Shown piece after piece: positions 1 to 9,987 of a DNA stretch of 12,529 bases (positions are counted from its first letter, which is position 1; every line of letters starts with the position of its first letter). Made by a program: the position numbers and the translations under genes. The stretch covers positions 1-12,529 of the IMG/VR virus record IMGVR_UViG_3300017593_000998; one strand, given 5' to 3'. The notes below the pieces were generated by a model. It was not told the DNA's origin. It saw only the letters and a list, made by a program, of their open reading frames with translations, and did not search any database.

Positions 1-1013
1 TCGCCACCGCACGACTCAACGCACTGGTCGTAGCTGTCCATCGCCGACTGGACGAAGTTGAGGTAGTACTTGAAGTTCTCGGAGCGCCTCGATTCCATCC
101 TATCAAAGGTCACGCACACGGTGGCCACTATGAGGGCCACGAGGATTAGTGCCACGATGTACCCCGGAATTGGCAGTCCGAGCCCGCCGACACGGCGCAC
201 CGGCATGTAAACTATGTATCCGTCGCTCGTCTCCTCGACGTACGGCCCGGTGACGGCCTTTCCAGAGTCCGTAGTGTAGGGCGTCGGGTCAAGCGCCAGC
301 CCGAAGCCCGCCAGCAGGTTCTGGATGTCGTCAATCTGGCCCTTTATCTTGCGCTCGTAGACGTACTCGGCCACCGAGCTGAAGCCCGGAATCTTGTAAA
401 CGATGCCCTCCGGCTTCTTGTAGTAGAACTTGAACACGTCCCTGTCGGCGGTGAGCGTGGTGAACGGCATATCGAGGAGCCTTGCCTCGTAGCCGACCCA
501 GTAGTAGCCGTCCGGGATGACTACCGTTTGCAGGTCCATGCACCCAAGTACCGGGTCGTAGCGCGTGCACACCTGCAACTGCCTGGTCTTTAGGTTGGAG
601 CTCGGGTAGCGGCCCCACATGACGCCCGACTTCCACTCCCTATACTGCGTTTCGAGCGGCCTGTCCTCCGGCTTGTTCAGCCCGGCGTAGAGCAGGTGGG
701 TCGCCGTCTTGTAGTCCACGAGCAGGACTGGAAACATGGTGGCGTACTGCCTGCCCTGCTCGTCCGTCTTGACGTAGTACTGGAGGAAGATACGGTGGAC
801 GTTCGGCGAGTAGCGCACCCTTATGTCGCCGATGACCTTCTCCTTGTACGTGCTGAGCACCTGCGACGGGATCTGGAAGGTCTCCGGGTCAAAGGGGACG
901 TACATCACAGTGCCCCAGCCCCCCACCTTGAAGAGGTTGAGCGCTGGCGCGTCAGTAGGTTCAAGGGGCGGGCTGACCGCTATCAGCTTACCCTCCTTAA
1001 CCAGCATGGTCAT
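1..1013 (-). CDS. Membrane protein, >337 aa, truncated by the window edge; contains a diverged copy of the W/Y-rich repeat domain and a TM helix (absent from the ORF track)
   Basis: ATG at 1013 after GGGGGAGGCGGTGA, 3 nt past the upstream stop. The frame is open to the window edge: MTMLVKEGKLIAVSPPLEP...LLYAGLNKPEDRPLETQYREWKSG...DGYYWVGYEARLL...GLPIPGYIVALILVALIVATVCVTF (TM)...DSYDQCVESCGG. Confidence 0.9.
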   Translation of the reverse strand, partial: MTMLVKEGKLIAVSPPLEPTDAPALNLFKVGGWGTVMYVPFDPETFQIPSQVLSTYKEKVIGDIRVRYSPNVHRIFLQYYVKTDEQGRQYATMFPVLLVDYKTATHLLYAGLNKPEDRPLETQYREWKSGVMWGRYPSSNLKTRQLQVCTRYDPVLGCMDLQTVVIPDGYYWVGYEARLLDMPFTTLTADRDVFKFYYKKPEGIVYKIPGFSSVAEYVYERKIKGQIDDIQNLLAGFGLALDPTPYTTDSGKAVTGPYVEETSDGYIVYMPVRRVGGLGLPIPGYIVALILVALIVATVCVTFDRMESRRSENFKYYLNFVQSAMDSYDQCVESCGG

Positions 1014-1016
1014 AAC

Positions 1017-1448
1017 TCACCGCCTCCCCCTAGTTCCAGCGTAGTCGAGCGCCAGCAGGATTAGGGCGTAAGCGCCGAGAAGCTTCAGCATCCCAATCAT
1101 GTTGCTCTTGCTGTCAACTGTCAGCTTTGCGGGGTACTGGACGAGGTACCACAAACCGTCGCTCTGGCAGTACTGCCTCTCCAGCTCAACGCCGTTCATC
1201 CAGTTCTGCACAATCTGGTCAACCGTATGGTCGGGTGGCTTGGAGGGGCTCTTGTAAATGACGCGCACCTTTGAAGGGTCGCCGTAGATTGTCAAATGAG
1301 CCCCCATCACGTCCGGGTTTACCTGCTTAACTATGTCGGTAACGTCAATTATTGGGCTGGTCTGGTTCGCCCATCTCACAAGGCGCGGGCTGTTCTTGTA
1401 GGTGTTCACCATCCCGCTTATGAGCGTCTCGACGCTACACTCCACCAT
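1017..1448 (-). CDS. 143-aa protein: one copy of the W/Y/C-rich repeat domain plus a C-terminal membrane anchor
   Basis: RBS GGAGGTGA 5 nt before ATG. Clearly homologous to the N-terminal domain of 2354..4390 (WANQxSP, DVT, LTIYGD, NWxxGVExERQYCQxDGxWY). Ends MIGMLKLLGAYALILLAL followed by RGRR. Confidence 0.9.
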   Translation of the reverse strand: MVECSVETLISGMVNTYKNSPRLVRWANQTSPIIDVTDIVKQVNPDVMGAHLTIYGDPSKVRVIYKSPSKPPDHTVDQIVQNWMNGVELERQYCQSDGLWYLVQYPAKLTVDSKSNMIGMLKLLGAYALILLALDYAGTRGRR

Positions 1449-1944: not shown

Positions 1945-1999
1945 TGAAGGCTGGGGGCCCCCACCGTGGACGGCGGAGGGTCAGCCTCCGGCTCCTTCA
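1945..1999. other. GC-rich, highly self-complementary intergenic segment
   Basis: TGAAGG (1945-1950) and CCTTCA (1994-1999) enclose the palindrome TGGGGGCCCCCA (1952-1963), CCGTggACGG (1964-1973) and CGGAGG-gtcag-CCTCCG (1974-1990). Confidence 0.45.
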
Positions 2000-2332
2000 G
2001 ATTGGCACAGCGTAGTCCTCCGGAACGTACATACTGACGCTAACTGACCCGGTGTACGTTCCTGAAGTCGTCGGGGCCGTGAAGGTGAACGATTTGCTCC
2101 CTCTGCCTTTAGAGCCGACTGATATAGTGCCGCTCTGTGTCTTTCCGAATAGCTTGGCTATAATGGAGAAGTTTGCTGAAAACGGGTTGGGGTTGTCCAC
2201 TGTAACAGTTACCGTCACGGGCTCCCCCGGGGCAACTGCCGTTTTGTTTAGGGCTACGTCGAAGCTACCTTTTTGGGCCACCGGCTTCACGGTTACGCTC
2301 ATAGACCTGGTTCCCAGGCTAATCCACCCCAC
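1997..2332 (-). CDS. 111-aa protein: N-terminal putative donor strand plus a CARDB/Ig-like domain apparently lacking its last strand
   Basis: RBS GGGGGTGA upstream. Starts MGWISLGTRSMSVTV. Ig pattern LNKTAVAPGEPVTVTVTVDN...KSFTFTAPTTSGTYTGSVSVSMY, then only VPEDYAVPI*. Confidence 0.88.
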   Translation of the reverse strand: MGWISLGTRSMSVTVKPVAQKGSFDVALNKTAVAPGEPVTVTVTVDNPNPFSANFSIIAKLFGKTQSGTISVGSKGRGSKSFTFTAPTTSGTYTGSVSVSMYVPEDYAVPI

Positions 2333-2353: not shown

Positions 2354-4390
2354 TTAGTAATACGCGTAAAGCTCGACCTTAACCCCATGCTCACCCACCT
2401 TAACATCCGGGGGGACTGTTATTGGGGCCTCGATTATCGTCGGGCTTGTGGTTGCAGTGACCTCTTCTGACTCGTAGTGCCTGCCGAATGCGTCAATGCC
2501 GAGCTTGAACTTTAGACTACCCGGCGCCTCCCAGTTGACTTTTGCTATTATTTTCAGGGTGTCGCCGGCCGCTACTGTGGTCTTGTCAACGCTGGCCTCC
2601 CAGCCGATTGTTGGAGCTGTTACGTAAACCTGCTTTGACATTGCATAGAACCCACTATCAGAGTATCTAAGCAATATCAGCGTGAGCGTGTGGTAGCCAG
2701 TTGATAGTGGTGGTAGCTTTGCAACTTTCGTGAACCTTCTCTGCCCGGCCTTCCAAGCGTCGTAGTTGACCTCTACCTGGTCAACCAGCTTGCCGTCCAC
2801 GAATAGCTTCGCGCCCCAGGGCCTTTCGTAATGTGTCACGTACCCTCCAACGTCATAGTTGTAAGCCACAACTCTTACGTAACCCTCAACCCCAAACTCT
2901 ACTGTCCCATCGCTCCTTATATTTAGTATTGGAGTCGCCCTGGGTGCATTGTACTTAAATTCGGCCGGTATCTTGACCCAGTACCACTTTCCGCTCTTTG
3001 AAGAGTACATTCTTTCCATTTCGTAGCCTTCCAGCCAGCCCTTGACCACCTTAGTGCAGAAAGTATAACCATCGCTGTACCTGTCGGGCGGTTTGTCCCA
3101 GCCGTATTCAATGACTTCAATCTGGCTCGGCCTGTCTAGGTAGAGCTTCACCGTGCCGCCACTGGAGTAGTTGTCGTCTGCGTATCTTAGGCGGGTTCCG
3201 AATACAGTTATTTCGTCCAAGTATTCATAAGTTGGGTACTTTCTGTTCATCGTTGACTTCAGCTTGCTCTCGACGTTTATTGTCGGGGTCTTGCTCCCGT
3301 AGTAGGAGACGAGCGAGTTAACGAAGTCTTGGACAGAAGGCTCCTGGGTTCCCGGGATGACCCATGAGTACTGTGCACTCTCGTCCTCAACCCAGCCACC
3401 GCTGTAAAGCTCCACGAGGCCCTTGAGCGTGTACTTTCCGGGCAGGTTTGGCATCTTGAAGGTGAATGAGCCAGAAGTGCTCTTACCACTAGCAAGGTAG
3501 TACTCCTTCGAATACACCTGGACGACCTGAGAGTTCGGCTGTACCAGGAGAAACCTAAGCCTGAATTTGTAGCTCTTGTCCCAGCCGTTGGTGTGCGTCC
3601 AGTTTACAGTCACGGTCTCTCCAAGGCCGGGGTTGGACGGGCTAAGCTTGAAGGAGAACCTTTTCACCGTTACTGCCTCAGTCTCTATGTCGAGCTTGCA
3701 CGGGTAGAGAACCCAGTACCACTTTCCAGTCTTACTGCACTGTACCCTCTCCCACTCCTGGCCAGCCATCCAGTTCTCAACGATGTTCTTCAGCGCCTCA
3801 GTGCCGTACTTCTCAATGACGGCCGGCCTGCCGTCATAGTACTTATCTGGCTTGGTGTCGTACGGGCCGATTATCTTCTGGGGCTTGCTACGATAGACTG
3901 TAAGAGTGCCCCTTATGACCTTCGGCTGGACCACGTACTGGTCAACAATGCCAGTCACGTCAACAACCGCGTCCTGCTGAACAAAGTCATTCAGAACGCA
4001 GGGTAGGGTTAGGGTGCCCTGGACTTCGAGCTTGCACGGGTAGATGACCCAGTACCACTCGCCGTCCTCCTGGCAGTACTGGCGCTCGAACTCGACGCCT
4101 GCCAGCCAGTTGTGGAGGATGTTCCACCTCGCCCTGTCGCCGTACACGCCCACGTCGGCCGGCCTGCCGTCCGGGTACGTGGTGGGTTTTGTGGAGCCGG
4201 CCTTGACGATTTTTATCCTCGCAAGGTCGTCGCCGTAAATGGTAAGGGTGGCCTTGGTGACCTTTGGGCAGACCGCCCTGACCGTCTCGGTGACATCAAG
4301 GACTGGGGAGTACTGGTTAGCCCAGCTAATGGCAGTCTTGGAGTAGTTGTTCACCATTCCGTCCCTGAATATTTTAGCGTCGCACCCCAC
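2354..4390 (-). CDS. ~678-aa modular surface or spike protein: repeat-repeat-Ig-repeat-Ig-Ig (last Ig incomplete)
   Basis: Start moved to GTG at 4390: it follows RBS GAGAGGTGA, and MGCDAK parallels MVECSV of the 143-aa paralog. Three copies of the W-x-x-G-x-E-x-E-R...G-x-W-Y-W-V domain and three Ig-like segments. Ends GEHGVKVELYAYY*. No signal peptide or TM. Confidence 0.92.
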   Translation of the reverse strand: MGCDAKIFRDGMVNNYSKTAISWANQYSPVLDVTETVRAVCPKVTKATLTIYGDDLARIKIVKAGSTKPTTYPDGRPADVGVYGDRARWNILHNWLAGVEFERQYCQEDGEWYWVIYPCKLEVQGTLTLPCVLNDFVQQDAVVDVTGIVDQYVVQPKVIRGTLTVYRSKPQKIIGPYDTKPDKYYDGRPAVIEKYGTEALKNIVENWMAGQEWERVQCSKTGKWYWVLYPCKLDIETEAVTVKRFSFKLSPSNPGLGETVTVNWTHTNGWDKSYKFRLRFLLVQPNSQVVQVYSKEYYLASGKSTSGSFTFKMPNLPGKYTLKGLVELYSGGWVEDESAQYSWVIPGTQEPSVQDFVNSLVSYYGSKTPTINVESKLKSTMNRKYPTYEYLDEITVFGTRLRYADDNYSSGGTVKLYLDRPSQIEVIEYGWDKPPDRYSDGYTFCTKVVKGWLEGYEMERMYSSKSGKWYWVKIPAEFKYNAPRATPILNIRSDGTVEFGVEGYVRVVAYNYDVGGYVTHYERPWGAKLFVDGKLVDQVEVNYDAWKAGQRRFTKVAKLPPLSTGYHTLTLILLRYSDSGFYAMSKQVYVTAPTIGWEASVDKTTVAAGDTLKIIAKVNWEAPGSLKFKLGIDAFGRHYESEEVTATTSPTIIEAPITVPPDVKVGEHGVKVELYAYY
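3690..4059. repeat. 34-bp direct repeat (32/34 identical) at 3690-3723 and 4026-4059; a 17-bp part (3711-3727) recurs at 2976-2992
   Basis: tcgagcttgcacgggtaga(ga/tg)acccagtaccact, encoding the WYWV(L/I)YPCKL ends of the repeat domains. Confidence 0.85.
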
Positions 4391-4395
4391 TGCTA

Positions 4396-4557
4396 TCACC
4401 TCTCCCTAGACATTAGGGCTATCGCCAACCCAGCAGCACCAAGCACTAAGAGCAGGCCAGACCCCTTGTCACCAGTCGGCGAAGGCGTTGGGGAGGGGGT
4501 CGGTGTAACGACCTCCACCGAGAACGTCTTTGAACCAACTGGATACCAGCTAGCCAT
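4396..4557 (-). CDS. 53-aa micro-protein: putative donor strand, Pro/Thr linker and TM anchor (absent from the ORF track)
   Basis: RBS GGGGGTGG 4 nt before ATG. MASWYPVGSKTFSVEVVTPTPSPTPSPTGDKGSGLLLVLGAAGLAIALMSRER*. Its stop lies in the RBS of the next gene, so it fills the gap exactly. Confidence 0.88.
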   Translation of the reverse strand: MASWYPVGSKTFSVEVVTPTPSPTPSPTGDKGSGLLLVLGAAGLAIALMSRER

Positions 4558-4569
4558 TATACCACCCCC

Positions 4570-4677
4570 TCAGTAGTAGGCCTCCAGCCGGACTGAACCC
4601 TGGTAGGTTCCCGGGTTCTGCGGTGCGGTGAACGTGAATGTATGGTCCCAACCACGTGCCACGTCGCCATCCAGCAT
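4570..4677 (-). pseudogene. Frameshifted or internally deleted paralog of the 111-aa Ig-like subunit
   Basis: ATG at 4670 gives MATWHVVGT (donor-strand-like). A different frame (ATG 4677) gives MLDGDVARGWDHTFTFTAPQNPGTYQGSVRLEAYY*, whose end matches SFTFTAPTTSGTYTGSVSVSMY of 1997..2332. Confidence 0.65.
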
Positions 4678-4711
4678 CCCCCCTTTTTGTTGTACGTGTA
4701 ACTAAACTGGT

Positions 4712-5035
4712 TTAACCAAACATGTGGTTTAACGCCCAGATTAGCAGCCCGCTGGATATAGCAATTGAGATTATAACAGTGGCCCCTTTTACCTTGTCTC
4801 GAAAGGATTCCAGTTGCTCGACTTTAAGCTCCAGTTCTTTTATCCTCTGGTCGGTGTCTGCCTGGTACATTTCCACCATCTCCTTCAGTTCGTCATTGTT
4901 TTTTTCCAGCATGCTAATGATTTCATCGAGCCTGCTCTTAACCCATTCAAGGTCAGTAGATAGCTTGGCGATTGCCACCCCCATATCCATCATTTTTTGG
5001 CTGAGGCCGTTTCCGGAGTTCTCCCCGCTCCCCAC
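4712..5035 (-). CDS. 107-aa coiled-coil protein with C-terminal TM helix (architecture like XhlA/holin-type viral membrane proteins)
   Basis: RBS GGGGGCGG before GTG. Heptad-like LSTDLEWVKSRLDEI...IKELELKVEQLE, then hydrophobic ATVIISIAISSGLLIWAL. Confidence 0.8.
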   Translation of the reverse strand: MGSGENSGNGLSQKMMDMGVAIAKLSTDLEWVKSRLDEIISMLEKNNDELKEMVEMYQADTDQRIKELELKVEQLESFRDKVKGATVIISIAISSGLLIWALNHMFG

Positions 5036-5060
5036 GCTACCGCCCCCTTTACGCCGTTGG

Positions 5061-5348
5061 TCAGTCCCAGTCCTCCATCTCGGAGCGCTGGTCAGTGAGG
5101 CTCTGGTGCAGGACGTCGTGGAGCTGGGCCACGTCGAGCTTCAGCGCCTCCACGTCGTTGCGGAGCCTGGCGACCTCCTCGCTGAGCTGGCGGGCTTCCC
5201 TCTGCAAGTCCATGACCATGCTCTCAACCAGCTCGACCTTACCGTTGCTGACAGCTGAGCCGACCCTGCTGAACAGCCGGTACATGACCAGCGCCACGAG
5301 CGTCCCGCCGGCCAGCACCGAGACGAAGGCCCCCGTGTCAAACATCAC
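5061..5348 (-). CDS. ~95-aa protein with N-terminal TM helix and coiled coil
   Basis: AFVSVLAGGTLVALVMY, then heptads LQREARQLSEEVARLRNDVEALKLDVAQL. Overlaps the upstream stop. Start at GTG 5348 or ATG 5345. Confidence 0.8.
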   Translation of the reverse strand: MMFDTGAFVSVLAGGTLVALVMYRLFSRVGSAVSNGKVELVESMVMDLQREARQLSEEVARLRNDVEALKLDVAQLHDVLHQSLTDQRSEMEDWD

Positions 5349-5712
5349 TGCGCACCGCCCCCAGTGTTATCTTTTTCCTCAGCCAGCCGTCGGAGAGCGT
5401 TATGGTCACTCTGTGGCCGGCGAACTCCTGTGCCGCCAGCCACACCGTCGCCTCGTCGCACACTTCCAGCTCCACCGAGCCGTGCGCCTCCTGCTGACCG
5501 TCGCCCTCTATCAGGATGATGAAGTCGGTGCCAGGCACGTCAATCCCGACGTTCACGCACTTGAAGTACGGCCTTATCCAGACCCCGAATATCAAGCCGC
5601 CGCTCTTCGTCATCCTGACCTCGTTGCCCTCGACGCCTAGCAGTTTGTACTCTGCTGGCCCACGCCCGGAAAGGAAGTAAAGGAGCCGGCGGAGGAGTTC
5701 ACCGAACCTCAT
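5338..5712 (-). CDS. 124-aa hypothetical protein, beta-rich with an amphipathic N-terminus
   Basis: Fills the gap in the operon; starts 6 nt after the upstream stop. No family recognised. Confidence 0.7.
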   Translation of the reverse strand: MRFGELLRRLLYFLSGRGPAEYKLLGVEGNEVRMTKSGGLIFGVWIRPYFKCVNVGIDVPGTDFIILIEGDGQQEAHGSVELEVCDEATVWLAAQEFAGHRVTITLSDGWLRKKITLGAVRSDV

Positions 5713-5718
5713 AGCGCA

Positions 5719-6189
5719 TCACGGGAACGTTACTGTGACGTAGATGTCAAGCAGGATTGAGCTGTCCTTCGTTATGGCCGGGTCGATGGTCACGTGGTTG
5801 AACAGGGTTCCGGTAGTGTAGTCGTTGCCGTCCGTGTGCTCGTAGATGCCGGCCTCGGTGTAGGTGTAGCCGTTCGCGTCCTCCGGCAGGTAGCGGACGT
5901 AGTACTGGACTGTGTTGTTGCTCACGGTCACCTGTCCTGTCTTGGCAGAGCTGGGAACGGCGGTGAACAGGCCGGTGTCGTTTTCGCTCGGCGTCCCCGA
6001 GCCGGTTCCGAGGACGAGGAACCAGTTCGAGGAGCCCTGGCCCTGGCCCCACGCCTGGGCAAACATCTGCTTGGCGGCGGTCGTCAGGACGTTCTTCCTC
6101 TCCACAACGTTTACAACTTCGCCGGTCTCGGCGTCCCTGGCCACGAACTTCCAGGTCGCAACCGCCCCGACGGTTTCCCCAACCTTCAT
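5719..6189 (-). CDS. 156-aa virion protein, phage tail-collar/fibre-base-like (DUF3751-like), paralog A
   Basis: RBS GGGGGTGA. Motif chain NVLTTAAK...LVLGTGSGTP..NDTGL...EDANG...TEAGIY...GTLF...ITKD...LDIYVTV, typical of this widespread phage structural family (recognised by eye). Confidence 0.75.
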   Translation of the reverse strand: MKVGETVGAVATWKFVARDAETGEVVNVVERKNVLTTAAKQMFAQAWGQGQGSSNWFLVLGTGSGTPSENDTGLFTAVPSSAKTGQVTVSNNTVQYYVRYLPEDANGYTYTEAGIYEHTDGNDYTTGTLFNHVTIDPAITKDSSILLDIYVTVTFP

Positions 6190-6202
6190 AACATCACCCC
6201 CC

Positions 6203-6886
6203 TTATGGCAGTATTTTTATTGTGACATAAACGTCGAGTATGATGTCGGGCGTCTTCTCAATGCTCTGAGGGAGTAGGGCGTGTTCGAAGAGCACACCCG
6301 CCGTGTAGCGGTCGGGCGGGATGTAGTACTCGGCGTAGCTGTAGTCGCCGACCTGGTACCACTTCGGCGGTATGTTCTCGTAGATGCCGACCTCAGTGAA
6401 CGTGTAGCCGTTCAGCTCCTCGGGCATGTAGCGGACGTGGTACTGGAAGCCCCTGACCCCGCCCGTGCCGTCGAGGTACGTCAGGTCGGCGTCCGAGCCG
6501 TAGGGGAACGGCGTTATGTTCACGTGCCAGCCGCTCTGGTCGTGGGTGATGCTTATGGCCGCCCCGTCCTGGCCCTCCCCACGGGCGCTCTCGGGTACGG
6601 CCTGGAACAGGTCAGTGTCGCTCACGTCAGGCGTCCCGCTCCCGGTGCCGAGGACGAGCGCCCAGTACGGGCGGACATAGTAGCCGATGTCGTTTGGGCA
6701 GATAGGGTTTGAGGCCGGGTTGAGCCGTTTGGCCACGTACTTTCCCGTGAGCCAGGCCTGCCGGAGCAGGTCAGCGCCGGCGTTTGTTATGACGTTCTCG
6801 GTCGTTACCTCCTGCACCTTGCCCGTGCGGACGTTCGTCGCCACGACCCGGACGACGCCCTTAACTCCAAGCTCATCTACCCTCAT
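6203..6886 (-). CDS. 227-aa virion protein, tail-collar/fibre-base-like, paralog B with three insertions
   Basis: Start moved to ATG 6886 (RBS GGGGGTGG, directly after the upstream stop at 6888). Shares LVLGTGSGTP, AVPxSA, YxVRYxPExxNGYTxTExGIYE and ILLD/IILD with paralog A. Confidence 0.78.
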   Translation of the reverse strand: MRVDELGVKGVVRVVATNVRTGKVQEVTTENVITNAGADLLRQAWLTGKYVAKRLNPASNPICPNDIGYYVRPYWALVLGTGSGTPDVSDTDLFQAVPESARGEGQDGAAISITHDQSGWHVNITPFPYGSDADLTYLDGTGGVRGFQYHVRYMPEELNGYTFTEVGIYENIPPKWYQVGDYSYAEYYIPPDRYTAGVLFEHALLPQSIEKTPDIILDVYVTIKILP

Positions 6887-6887
6887 A

Positions 6888-8096
6888 TCAACCACCCCCG
6901 GCGTAGCGTTCAAACTTATTCAAGGTATAGTTTGTCGCCTCAGGCAGGCTCATGACGGATGGGTCGCTCTCGTCGGTCGTGTTGTTTGGGTTCAGCTCCA
7001 CGAAGAACCTCGTCTCGCTGTCAATGCCTATCCAGATGACCGCTTGTGGTGTTGAAGTGTCCCAAGTCTCGATGTAGTACGGCAGGCTGTAGCGTGCTGA
7101 GGCATACGCAATTCTAATGTCCGAGCCGTCAGCGTTTGCTTTTATGAAGTCAAAGTTCGAGCCGTCGAGGTCAATTGCAACTTGGAAGTGCTCTAGGTCA
7201 TAGTTGTTCGGGTTGGTGATTGTTATCTTACGGCGGTAGAGCCATCCGGAGATGTCGCTTGATTCTTCTTCGCCTACAACAATAGTTGGCTCTTGCTCGG
7301 CATACTTGCGGACACGAACCCAATCAATAAGCGTCTCCATACTTGCATCGTATGCACTTTTCTGAAATATCATCACGTAACCAGAGAAAGCATTTGTCTG
7401 CGTAATACTCGCTGTATTACCATCCCAATATCCTATATGTATATTCCCATCTGTCTTTATTCCTACTTGATGCCATTCGTTGCCCGTAATTGTCGCCAAC
7501 TCGCTTGATACCACTGAATTTCCGTCGTTAGAGACTATCCTTGTCGGATAACCCGAGCGGTATTTTAATTCCAGTCTTACGAGTGGTGCTTGCTCTGATG
7601 TCTGCGATGACGATAGTTCTAAGTGTACAGTATATGAACTCTTTAGCATAACCCTTGCCTCAACTACAAGAGGTTGTGTGAATGTGCGTTGTGTCGCCAA
7701 ATAGATTTTATTTGCAGCCCCTATACTTGTCTTAATGTCAAGTATGCTGTCTGATACTGTAATCGATGTCGAACCTTCTTCTACTAGTGTCCACTTTGTT
7801 GTGTCAACCGATGAACCCTCAAAATCATCATATAAGTCAAACACCTGCTCTGGGTCGCTCTCGCTCACCGCTGAGGGGTTTCCGTAGTAAACATACAAAT
7901 CAACGCTACTGTTAGCAGGGATTTTTGGCACTTTGACCCATACTTTTCCCTGCCCGTTTTGAGCGTCCCATTTTTCTATCCAGTACGGGAGTTTCCACGG
8001 CAAGCTCCACACCCTAACCGCTTCCCTCTTATTCTGAGCGTCGTCAAAAAACCTTTGAGCCGTAACCGTCAACTGCACCCTTTGAGTCGCCATCAC
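6888..8096 (-). CDS. ~401-aa DUF2341-containing protein with a central concanavalin/LamG-like beta-sandwich; candidate receptor-binding protein
   Basis: DUF2341-type motifs LPYWIEKWD...VWVKVPKIP...LYVYYGNPSA..SD...VF..YDDF, DWVRVRKY...EP, and WLYRRKITI...FQV.IDLD...FDF.KA..DGSDIR. Confidence 0.85.
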   Translation of the reverse strand: MMATQRVQLTVTAQRFFDDAQNKREAVRVWSLPWKLPYWIEKWDAQNGQGKVWVKVPKIPANSSVDLYVYYGNPSAVSESDPEQVFDLYDDFEGSSVDTTKWTLVEEGSTSITVSDSILDIKTSIGAANKIYLATQRTFTQPLVVEARVMLKSSYTVHLELSSSQTSEQAPLVRLELKYRSGYPTRIVSNDGNSVVSSELATITGNEWHQVGIKTDGNIHIGYWDGNTASITQTNAFSGYVMIFQKSAYDASMETLIDWVRVRKYAEQEPTIVVGEEESSDISGWLYRRKITITNPNNYDLEHFQVAIDLDGSNFDFIKANADGSDIRIAYASARYSLPYYIETWDTSTPQAVIWIGIDSETRFFVELNPNNTTDESDPSVMSLPEATNYTLNKFERYAGGG

Positions 8097-8104
8097 TCAC
8101 CACC

Positions 8105-9079
8105 TCACGTCACGCTATATTCGGCATACCACTCGCTTATGTCAAACGCACCCGTTCCGGCAGTCGTGGAGTAGTACTCCAGGGTGTCTAAGCTGTCTTG
8201 GGTTTCTTGAGGCGTTAGGGTCTGCACGGATACCACGTTTAGCGTTAGTTCGTCATAGGTGCTCTGCTGTTCGCTTATGCTGGAGGACATCATCACCTGA
8301 TATTCGGCGTACCACTCGCTTATGTCAAACGGCGTGCTGGCGGGCCCCGTTGATGTCAGCACCCTATCATGTGCATACACCGACTCGGCAAAGGCCCTGA
8401 TGACCAGCGCCTCATCGTCCTGCGGGACGTAGCCGGCCGGTATGTCGTCAGACCACTGGCGCTCGTCGAACCTCAGCACCTCGGCGGAGGCCGTGCTGGT
8501 GCCGAACGCCTCGCTTGTCTGTGCGGTCTCATCGAAGGTCAGCGTGACGGCCTGCGCCTGGTAGGTTGATATGCTGTCCTCGGGCACTACTGGCTCGTCA
8601 AAAGAGGGCGTGAGTATCTGGCCCGACCACACCTCGAAAGAAACCGAGTCGTCAATCGTCTCATCGAACGCCTGCACCACCACGTCGGCGGTCGAAACGG
8701 ATATTGAGGTGCCCGACTGCTGGGCTTCATCAAAGTATCTGCGCACGGCGTCGGCGGTCGTGTAGCTCAGGCCGTCGGTGCTGGTCTGCTCCTCTTCCAG
8801 CGCCCGAATTACCAGCGGTCTTGTCACGGCACCCACGTCTTCTTGTAGGACTTCAATTAACTCCTTAGCAATGTCGTCGTACGTGGCCACCACCACGGCG
8901 TCCCCGGCGCTCGCCATCTCACGGACGGTGTAGATGTATCGGTCTCTGATGACCACGAGCGTTATGTCGCCGCTGTGGTGCACTTCGGCCTCAACTGCCT
9001 TGCTGAGCAGGTCAATTAACCTCCTCGGCCCGAGCCTCGTACTGCCAACCTTCAGCACCGACGGCCAGCGCCCATTCAT
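8105..9079 (-). CDS. 324-aa acidic protein with about nine to ten ~22-aa repeats; candidate spike/fibre shaft or scaffold
   Basis: FDE recurs five times at exact 22-aa spacing, with further degenerate units. FDISEWYAEY occurs twice near the C-terminus. Confidence 0.85.
   Translation of the reverse strand: MNGRWPSVLKVGSTRLGPRRLIDLLSKAVEAEVHHSGDITLVVIRDRYIYTVREMASAGDAVVVATYDDIAKELIEVLQEDVGAVTRPLVIRALEEEQTSTDGLSYTTADAVRRYFDEAQQSGTSISVSTADVVVQAFDETIDDSVSFEVWSGQILTPSFDEPVVPEDSISTYQAQAVTLTFDETAQTSEAFGTSTASAEVLRFDERQWSDDIPAGYVPQDDEALVIRAFAESVYAHDRVLTSTGPASTPFDISEWYAEYQVMMSSSISEQQSTYDELTLNVVSVQTLTPQETQDSLDTLEYYSTTAGTGAFDISEWYAEYSVT
8117..8331. repeat. 32-bp direct repeat (31/32 identical) at 8117-8148 and 8300-8331
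   Basis: atattcggc(a/g)taccactcgcttatgtcaaacg, 183 bp apart and in frame, encoding FDISEWYAEY. Confidence 0.9.
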
Positions 9080-9082
9080 GCC

Positions 9083-9415
9083 TCAACCCACCCACATGAC
9101 GTAAATCTTCTGCGCCGTGCTCTGGCTGACGACGTAAACCTTCCCGAGGTTGTCAATCACGATGTCAACGCTCTCGCCAGGGTCGAGGGCAAAACCTGTT
9201 CCAGAGCTTACTGAGCTGTCGAAGCCGATGTAAACGGCGTCCGTGTTGCCCTTGTCCGCCTTGATGGTGACCATCTTCACCTCCAGCGCCCCGAGGGCGG
9301 TCGGCGTCGTGCTGACCGTGAACTGGAACGTCCCGCCCTTCGAGGGCGAGCTCACGGCCCCCGCAACCGCCTGCTCCAACAGGTCGTAGTCAATCCTTGT
9401 GGACTTACCGAGCAT
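9083..9415 (-). CDS. 110-aa small jelly-roll-like virion protein (vertex/spike-base type)
   Basis: RBS GAGGTGGTGA. The pattern VTIKA..GN...VYIG...V..G.GF.L.PGES..I.IDNL.KVY is one I associate with small viral beta-barrel proteins. Confidence 0.75.
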   Translation of the reverse strand: MLGKSTRIDYDLLEQAVAGAVSSPSKGGTFQFTVSTTPTALGALEVKMVTIKADKGNTDAVYIGFDSSVSSGTGFALDPGESVDIVIDNLGKVYVVSQSTAQKIYVMWVG

Positions 9416-9426
9416 CTTTCACCACC

Positions 9427-9987
9427 TCACGGCAGGAACCCCTCGTACTCCCTTATTATCCTCGGCGCCGGGGCCGGCAGTCCGGGCGTGGGCGGCTGTG
9501 CTGGCACCTGTACCTGCAACTGCGGCATCAGCGCCCTGAGCGACCCTATGAACAAATCCATGTTGGTGACCCTGATGAGCAGGACCTCGTAGTTCAGCGT
9601 GGCGTCGCTTGAGCCGCCGATAAGCTCAATCCTCATCCTGCCCTTGATGGCCAGCGGCGGGTTCGGCGAGAGCTCCACGGCGTACTCGTTCGTGCCCGGC
9701 GAATAGACCGCAACGAAGGGCATGGTCGAGGTGAAGGTGTAGCCCTTGCCCTCCAGCTCACTCGCTATCAGCCGGAACTCCGTGGTGCTACCGAAGGCCG
9801 GGTCGTACTCAATCCTCAGCCCTGCGTCCGGCACGTTGGAGGTCACCCTTGCCCCGATGAACCACCCTGCCTCCTCGTCGGGTGAGGAGTAAACCTCCTT
9901 CTTCTTGCCCGCCTCGACCGGCTCGGTGTCCACGTACCGTATTTCCGTCCAGCCCTCAAGGAGCGGGAGCATACTCAGCAGGTCCAT
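9427..9987 (-). CDS. 186-aa beta-rich protein with a Pro-rich tail; candidate penton or minor capsid protein
   Basis: Start moved to ATG 9987 (MDLLSMLP; RBS GGAGGAGTGA, 4 nt after the upstream stop). Alternating strands GWFIGARVTS, GLRIEYD, YAVELSPNPPL, GRMRIELI, NYEVLLIRV. The fold is inferred. Confidence 0.7.
   Translation of the reverse strand: MDLLSMLPLLEGWTEIRYVDTEPVEAGKKKEVYSSPDEEAGWFIGARVTSNVPDAGLRIEYDPAFGSTTEFRLIASELEGKGYTFTSTMPFVAVYSPGTNEYAVELSPNPPLAIKGRMRIELIGGSSDATLNYEVLLIRVTNMDLFIGSLRALMPQLQVQVPAQPPTPGLPAPAPRIIREYEGFLP

What the first reader, a model, noticed from the sequence alone, without database searches (positions are those of the whole stretch)
4570..4677. Collapsed Ig subunit: donor-strand start and acceptor end joined out of frame
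Seen: MATWHVVGT and HTFTFTAPQNPGTYQGSVRLEAYY* are adjacent but in different frames at GGG ACC AT ACA TTC. Adding one base gives the 33-aa MATWHVVGTHTFTFTAPQNPGTYQGSVRLEAYY, in register with MASWYPVGSKTFSVEV. About 70 residues are missing relative to the 111-aa paralog. Inference: either a deletion between two TFT-like microhomologies, a variable locus that gains and loses modules, an assembly collapse of tandem Ig units, or a frameshift-dependent mini-peptide.
Basis: partly seen in the sequence, partly recalled or inferred. Interest (0 to 1): 0.6.

Follow-up and report, generated by a model that had tools for sequence, protein, structure and literature searches.

The report
Deleted, frameshifted small Ig gene remnant
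In this archaeal-virus contig from a hydrothermal vent, a roughly 102-106 aa immunoglobulin-like surface-protein gene has lost its middle by a real out-of-frame deletion, and intact relatives suggest it belonged to a set of proteins that clip together by lending each other a beta-strand.

Summary
On the minus strand, 4670-4645 encodes MATWHVVGT. From 4644 to 4570, a frame shifted by one base encodes HTFTFTAP...EAYY plus a stop.

These are the two ends of a conserved gene of 102-106 aa. Syntenic relatives L011, L013, L016 and L018 carry it intact at the same position, between a coiled-coil membrane protein and a 51-60 aa 'strand + linker + membrane anchor' mini-gene. The window lacks 208-220 nt, which is 3n+1.

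The junction is not an assembly artefact. It is identical in contigs from at least six assemblies or runs, in strains 0.2-5.5% diverged. An intact relative co-occurs in the same samples. There is no slippery site, and one strain has lost a conserved Tyr, so this is most likely a dead remnant.

The module around it is the more interesting part:
- The Ig cores end in YY* and appear to lack a last strand.
- In one homologue that strand is fused in cis.
- A complex prediction puts the anchor's N-terminal strand antiparallel to the Ig C-terminal strand (0.65 against a best control of 0.02).

This points to donor-strand coupling of virus membrane proteins, but the evidence is predictive only.

The parts
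4645..4670 (-). Retained 5' end of the broken gene: the ancestral ATG plus 8 2/3 codons (MATWHVVGT), which is the first half of the conserved N-terminal strand motif.
   Evidence: A co-occurring relative's contig matches only these 26 nt and then continues with codons for KTLSVTVEQ (loose end at 4645). L018 carries the same continuation.
4570..4644 (-). Retained 3' end: the last 24 codons (HTFTFTAP...VRLEAYY) plus the ancestral TGA stop. It lies in a frame shifted by one base relative to the start.
   Evidence: BLASTP against P0169 gives 17/24, E 3e-11.
4644..4645 (-). Deletion junction. The window lacks 208 nt relative to L011 and 220 nt relative to L018, both 3n+1.
   Evidence: DNA alignment A5. 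No indel variant at this place in contigs of runs X1, X2 and X3. Identical in L005-L010 and L012.
4671..4690 (-). Degenerate ribosome-binding site of the broken gene. It contains the secondary ATG (4675-4677) that opens the 35-aa frame-B ORF.
   Evidence: Comparison with L011 and L018 upstream regions (GGAGGTGGTG in relatives, AGGGGGGATG here). One-base length variation in the G run at 4684-4688 between strains.
4396..4557 (-). A 53-aa mini-gene: N-terminal strand motif (MASWYPVGSKTFSVEV), Thr/Pro linker, and a C-terminal membrane anchor. It is conserved and intact.
   Evidence: Orthologues of 51, 56 and 60 aa directly follow an ...AYY* Ig gene in L011, L018 and L016. Complex prediction with the L011 pair.
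4712..5035 (-). A 107-aa coiled-coil protein with a C-terminal membrane segment. It is the upstream syntenic marker.
   Evidence: Homologues precede the intact gene in L011, L013 and L018.
2354..4399 (-). A 681-aa multi-domain protein whose C-terminal Ig-like domain ends ...ELYAYY*.
   Evidence: Its C-terminal domain is 41% identical (E 4e-15) to the Ig domain of the L011 249-aa protein. That protein continues with a cis strand, linker and anchor.
1997..2332 (-). The intact 111-aa paralogue: N-terminal strand MGWISLGTRSMSVTV plus an Ig core. It may act as a redundant adaptor.

Best explanation
The stretch 4570-4677 is the dead remnant of a small structural gene of an archaeal virus.

Shown:
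- The ancestral gene encoded about 102-106 aa: an N-terminal strand motif (M-A-x-W-H-x-V-G-x-K...V-x-V), a short Pro-rich linker, and a CARDB-like Ig core ending ...LEAYY*.
- An internal deletion of 3n+1 bases (about 208-220 nt) removed residues 10 to about 78-82 and shifted the frame. Neither the start nor the end can now give a folded domain.
- The deletion is real and old enough to be shared by strains up to about 5% diverged. The gene is therefore dispensable in this lineage.

Inferred:
- In intact relatives the Ig core lacks its last strand.
- That strand is supplied in trans by the N-terminal strand of the next protein, ultimately by the 51-60 aa tail-anchored mini-protein encoded just downstream. 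Separately encoded modules would thus be tethered to the viral or host membrane by donor-strand complementation.
- In the window, the 111-aa paralogue encoded after the 681-aa protein may take over the lost adaptor role. The chain would be 681 C-terminal Ig, then the 111-aa protein, then the 53-aa anchor.
For: Reading of the frames.

Intact orthologues at the syntenic place:
- L011, 102 aa.
- L013, 103 aa.
- L016, 102 aa.
- L018-L021, 106 aa, from the same samples as the window.
- A wider family of 101-106 aa proteins.

Deletion and its reality:
- Protein alignment A2 places the window's two pieces on orthologue residues 1-9 and 79-102.
- DNA alignment A5 gives 208 or 220 missing nt.
- Junction-spanning contigs with no indel come from runs X1, X2 and X3, covering two studies.
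- The same junction is in JGI 3300017593, JGI 3300010330, ENA ERZ23499183, ERZ23499206 and ERZ27245762, and Logan SRR5214151.
- Strains with the junction differ by 0.2-5.5% overall.
- Three substitutions fall in the remnant. All are non-synonymous in both ancestral frames, and one replaces the conserved Tyr of GTYxG.

Strand model:
- Ig-core-only proteins (86 and 88 aa) and strand-only anchors exist.
- The motif occurs once on an Ig protein and once on an anchored protein in each relative.
- The fused homologue reads YY-NGK-strand-linker-TM. AF2 gives it an extra hairpin strand (194-205) at pLDDT 84-93, within a domain that aligns over 92-100 residues to complete Ig-like sandwiches (Z 10-11, rmsd 2.3-2.9).
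- AF2 of the 102-aa protein gives a six-strand core and an unstructured N-terminal 21 residues.
- Complex prediction of the 86-aa core with anchor residues 1-30 scored 0.65, against 0.02 for the best of 3 controls. That mark was reached by 51 of 78 solved complexes and 2 of 108 mismatched pairs. The runs agree in at least 97% of contacts and the partner's pLDDT is at least 72. Anchor residues 2-19 lie antiparallel to core residues 72-86.
Against: - Only contigs, not raw reads, could be laid, so rare longer alleles in the same strain cannot be excluded.
- The immediate parent sequence is unknown. The exact size and mechanism of the deletion are therefore inferred from relatives that are only 45-70% identical in this gene.
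- The remnant's divergence between strains (3%) lies within the range of neighbouring genes (0.3-10%), so relaxed constraint is not demonstrated statistically.
- The strand-complementation part rests on predictions and a fusion argument.
- A pass in the complex test does not say which family member binds. The tested pair is from L011, not from the window.
- No signal peptide is visible on these proteins, unlike known donor-strand pilins.
Confidence: 0.85

Rival explanations
1. Assembly artefact: a collapse or chimera of tandem or co-occurring Ig genes created the junction, and the real genome has an intact gene.
For: The contig is metagenomic. A related virus sharing the first 26 nt co-occurs in the same samples. 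One contig of the same sample (L005) does carry an odd inverted junction nearby.
Against: The same junction appears in SPAdes-type scaffolds, k141 contigs, Logan contigs and JGI contigs from at least six assemblies and at least two studies. The spanning contigs are 782-1663 nt long, and their depth equals that of the flanks. No repeat longer than a few bases links the two sides. Strains that differ at other sites share the junction.
Confidence: 0.03
2. The remnant is still used. It could be a 33-aa product made by -1 frameshifting, or the separate 35-aa or 37-aa ORFs. For example, an F-G hairpin peptide might cap or compete for donor strands, or the ORF might serve as a translational-coupling leader for the 53-aa gene.
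For: The remnant has persisted in diverged strains. The frame-A stop TAA overlaps the ATG of the 53-aa gene (TAATG). The ancestral start and part of its G-rich ribosome-binding site remain.
Against: The junction G GGA CCA is not an X XXY YYZ slippery site. About 70% of the domain is missing. The three substitutions between strains change the amino acid in both frames and remove the conserved Tyr. The frame-B ATG sits directly against the G run with no spacing, and it arose by mutation of the old ribosome-binding site. No relative has such a short gene.
Confidence: 0.07
3. The deletion was not internal to one gene. It fused the start of a 102-type gene to the end of a second, downstream Ig-core gene, as in L011 where a 102-aa and an 86-aa gene lie in tandem before the anchor. 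In that case about 500 nt and two genes were lost.
For: L011 has exactly this tandem. The remnant's 3' flank (TACTACTGAGGGGGTG...ATG) is nearer to L011's 86-to-51 junction than to its 102-to-86 junction.
Against: The closest relatives, L018 and L016, have a single gene before the anchor. The remnant's last 24 residues are nearer to the 106- and 102-type proteins (17/24 and 15/24) than to the 86-type (12/24) (the last two are counted by eye from alignment A2).
Confidence: 0.2
4. The proteins do not exchange strands. The N-terminal motif is an ordinary cis strand or an unrelated signal such as targeting or assembly. The mini-proteins are then independent small membrane proteins, and the broken gene was simply one more decorative Ig protein.
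For: All support for strand donation is predictive. Topology would also allow cis pairing of the N-terminal strand. The Pfam matches to CARDB and BatD are below threshold and say nothing about assembly.
Against: Proteins exist that consist of nothing but the motif, a linker and an anchor, and they are always encoded next to ...YY* Ig genes. Ig cores without the motif exist (86, 88 and 107 aa). There is the cis-fused homologue. The complex score is well above its controls. The motif region is unstructured in the monomer model.
Confidence: 0.35

Closest known systems
Donor-strand complementation filaments: bacterial chaperone-usher pili, and archaeal threads (PMC9715654), bundling pili (PMC12337348) and cannulae (bioRxiv 10.1101/2024.12.30.630787)
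   Same: The subunits are Ig-like and appear to lack a final strand. They carry an N-terminal extension predicted to insert next to the C-terminal strand of another subunit. Subunit genes are clustered.
   Different: Here the genes are viral. No signal peptide is visible. The chain would end in a tail-anchored mini-protein that is only strand, linker and membrane segment. The partners are heterologous modules, including a 681-aa multi-domain protein, rather than a homopolymer. No chaperone or usher is seen. Nothing has been shown experimentally.
CARDB / BatD-like Ig beta-sandwich domains (Pfam PF07705, PF13584; PF1109 CARDB structure 3idu/2kl6)
   Same: The fold class is shared. These are the best Pfam and Foldseek matches of the paralogue and orthologue. 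The profile search also finds many large archaeal and bacterial proteins with repeated domains of this kind.
   Different: Scores are below the Pfam gathering thresholds. The core is a single free-standing domain of about 80 aa ending YY*, with six predicted strands instead of seven.
Ordinary viral pseudogenes: internal deletion plus frameshift in a dispensable accessory structural gene
   Same: Both ends are retained, the middle is lost and the frame is broken. The remnant lies within an operon and is carried by a viable lineage.
   Different: Nothing unusual as a pseudogene. What stands out is the family that it reveals.
Betalipothrixvirus (AFV3/6/7/8/9) genomes
   Same: The 156-aa protein four genes upstream has homologues at 31-33% identity in these enveloped filamentous archaeal viruses. 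The estimated genome size of about 40 kb is similar.
   Different: No other protein tested matched. The habitat is a marine hydrothermal vent, not an acidic hot spring. No capsid protein was recognised, so family membership is open.

Membership tests
Unnamed family of 101-106 aa 'MATWH...LEAYY*' small Ig proteins (P0041, P0046, P0050, P0079, P0161-P0169) | N-terminal motif M-x-x-W-x-x-[VI]-G-x-K followed by a strand | tested here: inconclusive
   The first 9 residues are present and match. The rest of the strand is deleted.
Unnamed family of 101-106 aa 'MATWH...LEAYY*' small Ig proteins | C-terminal FTFTAP...G-x-V-x-LEAYY followed by a stop | tested here: met
   17/24 identical to P0169, E 3e-11. 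Alignment A2.
Unnamed family of 101-106 aa 'MATWH...LEAYY*' small Ig proteins | Position between the coiled-coil membrane protein and the strand-plus-anchor mini-gene | tested here: met
   Synteny with L011, L018 and partly L013 and L016.
Unnamed family of 101-106 aa 'MATWH...LEAYY*' small Ig proteins | One open frame of about 102 codons encoding the whole Ig core | tested here: not met
   208-220 nt are missing and the frame is shifted. This is a remnant, not a member in working order.
Pfam CARDB (PF07705) / BatD (PF13584) | HMM score at or above the gathering threshold | tested here: not met
   The 111-aa paralogue scores 23.4 on BatD (cut-off 24.1) and 14.5 on CARDB (cut-off 22.7). The 35-aa ORF has no hit.
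Pfam CARDB (PF07705) / BatD (PF13584) | CARDB-like beta-sandwich fold | tested here: inconclusive
   The best Foldseek match of the 102-aa model is PF1109 CARDB, with E 3e-3 and TM 0.57.
Donor-strand complementation assemblies | Incomplete Ig-like fold lacking one strand | tested here: inconclusive
   AF2 gives six strands in the 102-aa core and seven in the cis-fused homologue. The latter's full range aligns to complete sandwiches at Z 10-11. These are models only.
Donor-strand complementation assemblies | N-terminal extension of one subunit inserted beside the C-terminal strand of another | tested here: inconclusive
   Complex prediction scored 0.65 against 0.02 for the best of 3 controls. 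The mark was reached by 51 of 78 solved complexes and 2 of 108 mismatches. Contacts agree at 97% or more and the partner's pLDDT is at least 72. The pairing is antiparallel with residues 72-86. This is a prediction, and on the L011 pair.
Donor-strand complementation assemblies | Secreted subunits (signal peptide) and dedicated export or assembly factors | tested here: not met
   The proteins start directly with the strand motif, with no hydrophobic leader (read from the sequences). No usher or chaperone family appeared in the Pfam scans.
Donor-strand complementation assemblies | Formation of a polymer or stable hetero-oligomer | not testable with these tools
   Needs biochemistry or cryo-EM.
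Programmed -1 ribosomal frameshift sites | Slippery heptamer X XXY YYZ at the shift point | tested here: not met
   The junction reads G GGA CCA.

The most novel reading that the evidence does not exclude
A group of hydrothermal-vent archaeal viruses builds membrane-anchored surface assemblies from separately encoded parts by chaperone-free donor-strand complementation. A tail-anchored mini-protein of 51-60 aa, consisting only of a donor strand, a Pro-rich linker and a membrane segment, holds an adaptor made of a donor strand plus an incomplete Ig core. That adaptor in turn holds a large protein ending in an incomplete Ig domain. Modules are fused, split, duplicated and lost between relatives. 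The window catches one adaptor just after its loss, with the 111-aa paralogue taking over. This would be the first virus-encoded donor-strand coupling system.
Probability: 0.4. Interest if true: 0.7.

Novelty: new variant of a known kind. Interest (0 to 1): 0.4.

Why it matters
The broken gene by itself is an ordinary pseudogene. It does show that this adaptor is dispensable in one lineage, and that the contig is correctly assembled at this point.

Its value is as a pointer. The two surviving ends define the conserved donor and acceptor elements of an uncharacterised family. The relatives offer natural split, fused and deleted versions of the same module. If strand complementation is confirmed, it would extend a mechanism known from bacterial and archaeal pili to virus membrane proteins. 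It would also give a simple, heat-stable 'strand tag plus Ig core' pair from hyperthermophile viruses, and explain how these viruses swap surface modules.

Tried and rejected
Searches that gave nothing:
- Scans of viral contigs found no relatives. These used the 681-aa and 107-aa proteins, the relative's junction sequence, a degenerate N-terminal pattern and a YY*-ribosome-binding-site pattern.
- A metagenome-contig scan with the degenerate N-terminal pattern found nothing.
- The genome search could not resolve L016 to a held genome, so the host lineage remains unknown.
- PHROGs gave only tail-fibre-like hits for the 156- and 236-aa proteins.
- The 239-aa protein has no match in isolated phage or archaeal-virus genomes.
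- No RNA run holds the stretch, so expression could not be examined.

Ideas considered and dropped:
- In-frame stop read-through. Frame B and the 53-aa gene are in the same frame, separated by TGA plus 4 codons, and the same holds in L011. This is explained by the conserved ribosome-binding-site spacing. At the 681-to-111 junction further in-frame stops intervene. No alternative genetic code was used.
- A site-specific invertible segment to explain contig L005. No inverted repeats exist at its ends.
- A 33-aa third-frame ORF (4550-4651). All three strain substitutions are synonymous in it, but three sites are too few to mean anything.

Full report
**What the window is.** The window is a complete IMG/VR record of 12,529 nt. 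It is linear, and CheckV estimates it is about 32% of a genome. The best-holding runs are labelled hydrothermal vent metagenome, and a weaker holder is labelled marine metagenome. All long ORFs lie on the minus strand in a tight operon-like array. Pfam recognises little: DUF2341 in the 402-aa protein, weak tail-collar-fibre matches, and sub-threshold CARDB/BatD Ig matches. The 156-aa protein has homologues at 31-33% identity in betalipothrixviruses. Several proteins end in a single membrane segment. The most economical reading is a membrane-containing archaeal virus, but its family is open.

**The observation.** On the minus strand, an ATG at 4670 opens frame A, which begins MATWHVVGT and then reads nonsense to a TAA at 4557-4559. 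An ATG at 4677 opens frame B, the 35-aa ORF 4570-4677. Its first 11 residues are meaningless and its last 24 are HTFTFTAPQNPGTYQGSVRLEAYY, followed by TGA. The two meaningful pieces meet at GGG ACC ATA CAT TC.

**What it was.**
- A homologue of the upstream 107-aa coiled-coil protein (61% identity) led to a 16.5-kb JGI contig, L011.
- L011 has an intact 102-aa gene at the same position. It starts MATWHTVGTKTFYIDV and ends ...TFTFTAP...GKVTLEAYY*.
- A profile search of 1.84 billion representatives and a word search with the family alignment found about twenty such proteins of 101-106 aa.
- The closest is P0169 (106 aa). It is encoded on 10.8-39.8 kb contigs read here (L018-L021; the longest contig on record is 42.4 kb) from the very samples that hold the window.
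- P0169 is the source of the 'loose end' seen at 4645 in runs X1 and X2. That contig shares 4645-4670 with the window and then continues with codons for KTLSVTVEQ.
- Protein alignment A2 places the window's pieces on orthologue residues 1-9 and 79-102.
- DNA alignment A5 shows 208 nt missing relative to L011 and 220 nt relative to L018. Both are 3n+1, which explains the frame shift.
- The C-terminal piece matches P0169 at 17/24, E 3e-11.
- The frame-B ATG lies inside what is the ribosome-binding site in relatives (GGAGGTGGTG there, AGGGGGGATG here). MLDGDVARGWD is therefore not an ancestral coding frame, and no relative conserves it.

**Is the junction real?**
- Logan contigs assembled run by run span the junction with no insertion or deletion. 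X1 has 782 nt with 0 differences, X2 has 1581 nt with 7 differences, and X3 (from another study) has 1663 nt with 31 differences. The only indel in X3 is in the G/C run at 4684.
- The identical arrangement is present in two further JGI contigs of the source sample, in JGI 3300010330, in three ENA assemblies and in a Logan contig.
- Three haplotypes share the junction. Strains carrying it differ from the window by 0.2-5.5% overall and by up to 8% in the 681-aa gene.
- The two sides share no repeat that could cause a collapse.
- The deletion is therefore real and fixed in a lineage, and it predates the divergence of these strains.
- Caveat: contigs cannot exclude rare longer alleles.

**How the deletion arose.** The immediate parent is unknown. 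In L018 the right flank reads ...ACCACC|CACACT. If the parent had ACC at both sides, an in-frame microhomology deletion would give GGGACCCATACA. The window has GGGACCATACA, one C fewer. A deletion spanning two tandem genes, as L011 has, cannot be excluded. I put that at about 0.2.

**Is the remnant functional?** There is no slippery heptamer at the junction. About 70% of the domain is gone. The three substitutions between haplotypes (4646, 4604, 4601) change the residue in both ancestral frames. They turn the conserved Tyr of GTYxG into Cys in L008, L010 and L012. The remnant's divergence is not statistically distinguishable from that of its neighbours. I conclude it is a pseudogene, with about 0.07 left for some residual use such as coupling translation into the 53-aa gene, whose ATG overlaps the frame-A stop.

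**The module it belonged to.** The downstream 53-aa ORF (4396-4557) is not a fragment. It consists of MASWYPVGSKTFSVEV, a Thr/Pro linker and a membrane anchor. Orthologues of 51, 56 and 60 aa with the same three parts directly follow an ...AYY* Ig gene in L011, L018 and L016.
- Ig cores without the N-terminal motif also exist: 86 aa in L011, 88 aa in L018, and P0125.
- In each relative locus the motif occurs on one Ig protein and on one anchored protein.
- L011 also has a 249-aa protein whose Ig domain is 41% identical (E 4e-15) to the C-terminal domain of the window's 681-aa protein. Where the window's protein stops at ...LYAYY* and the next gene starts MGWISLGTRSMSVTV, the L011 protein continues YY-NGK-LVGSKSVSVTVEV, then a linker and an anchor. 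This is a natural fusion of the proposed partners.

**Structure predictions.**
- AF2 folds the Ig domain of the fused 249-aa protein at pLDDT above 90. The extra strand (194-205) forms a hairpin with the last core strand.
- The whole range 108-207 aligns to complete Ig-like sandwiches over 92-100 residues (Z 10-11, rmsd 2.3-2.9).
- The 102-aa orthologue folds into a six-strand core (mean pLDDT 88). Its first 21 residues are not in a strand and have pLDDT 65-72. Its best PDB match is the PF1109 CARDB domain, and the match is weak (E 3e-3).
- The one complex prediction allowed used the L011 86-aa core with residues 1-30 of its 51-aa anchor, and it supports binding. The score was 0.65, against 0.02 for the best of 3 controls. 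That mark was reached by 51 of 78 solved complexes and 2 of 108 mismatched pairs. The runs agree in at least 97% of contacts and the partner's pLDDT is at least 72.
- In that model, anchor residues 2-19 run antiparallel to core residues 72-86 and touch residues 4-17.
- This is the model's own confidence, not a measurement, and it does not say which family member is the true partner.

**Proposed mechanism.** This part is inferred, at about 0.5-0.6. Ig cores ending in YY lack a final strand. The N-terminal strand of the next module supplies it. The chain ends in the tail-anchored mini-protein.
- In L016 the gene order mirrors such a chain: the 559-aa protein, then the 102-aa protein, then the 60-aa anchor.
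- In the window, the cognate partner of the 53-aa anchor is the broken gene.
- The 111-aa paralogue is encoded right after the 681-aa protein, as the 102-aa gene is after the 559-aa protein in L016. It could link 681 to the anchor, which would explain why the loss is tolerated.
- Known analogues are chaperone-usher pili and the archaeal threads, bundling pili and cannulae (PMC9715654, PMC12337348, bioRxiv 10.1101/2024.12.30.630787).
- The differences are a viral origin, no visible signal peptide, heterologous partners and a strand-only anchor.
- A text search found no report of donor-strand coupling in archaeal virions. That is a limited library and not proof of absence.

**Verdict.** The interpretation as a collapsed subunit produced by deletion is supported. 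Assembly collapse is rejected and a frameshift peptide is unlikely. As a feature it is an ordinary pseudogene. As a lead it exposes a probably new variant of donor-strand assembly.

Noticed in passing
L005 1-1660 (JGI 3300017593 contig Ga0187538_167024); corresponds to window 4503-6144 joined to minus-strand 4573 downward: A strain-variant contig from the source sample joins the + strand up to about 6144 (inside the 156-aa gene, leaving a 141-aa ORF) to the inverted sequence starting at the ribosome-binding site of the 53-aa gene. About 70 nt are present twice in inverted orientation. Only 2-3 nt of microhomology (GA/CGA) lie at the junction, and the window has no inverted repeats there. It is either a fold-back chimera, perhaps from amplification or assembly, or an illegitimate inversion in a defective genome.
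   Followed up: partly
window 6888-8096 (402-aa DUF2341 protein), 5719-6189 and 2354-4399: Divergence between strains is very uneven. The covered end of the DUF2341 gene differs by 13-17%. The 156-aa gene differs by up to 10.6% and the 681-aa gene by up to 8%. Neighbouring genes differ by less than 1%. This mosaic pattern suggests recombination or diversifying surface proteins.
   Followed up: no
window 2354-4399 and 1017-1448: The 681-aa protein carries three copies of a domain of about 110 aa (...SWANQYSP...NW..G.E.ER..C...G.WYW..YP.KL). The same domain occurs alone with a C-terminal membrane anchor in the 143-aa protein. DNA repeats spaced 336 nt apart mark two of the copies (D7, D16). Homologues in L016 have the domains in a different order.
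   Followed up: no
window 5719-6189 and 6203-6913: Two paralogous proteins resembling tail-collar fibres share 75-77 nt DNA repeats (D1, D2). The 156-aa one has homologues at 31-33% identity in Betalipothrixvirus genomes of Acidianus and matches PHROG 5417/18275.
   Followed up: partly
window 4550-4651 minus strand: All three substitutions between haplotypes inside the remnant (4646, 4604, 4601) fall on third codon positions of a third-frame 33-aa TTG ORF and are synonymous there. With three sites, the chance of this for any one frame is about 1 in 9.
   Followed up: partly
window 1011-1032, 1926-1947, 8091-8112, 9413-9434: A repeated motif lies upstream of several genes. On the coding strand it reads GAGGTGGTGA(A/G)(A/T)GATG. 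It is a strong Shine-Dalgarno-like site at a fixed distance from the start codon (family D6).
   Followed up: no
window 3-1013, 1017-1448, 1461-1928, 4396-4557, 4712-5035: At least five proteins in a row end in, or carry near the C-terminus, a single hydrophobic segment followed by a few charged residues, and have no N-terminal signal peptide. These look like tail-anchored proteins. If the membrane forms inside the cell, their bulk would sit on the cytoplasmic, virion-outer face.
   Followed up: no
L013 3815-4678 (287-aa protein): One relative has a protein that carries both the N-terminal donor motif (MAEWHVVDTKSFGVNV) and a C-terminal Ig domain with a cis-fused strand, a Gly/Pro linker and an anchor. 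It could be both donor and self-complemented anchor.
   Followed up: no
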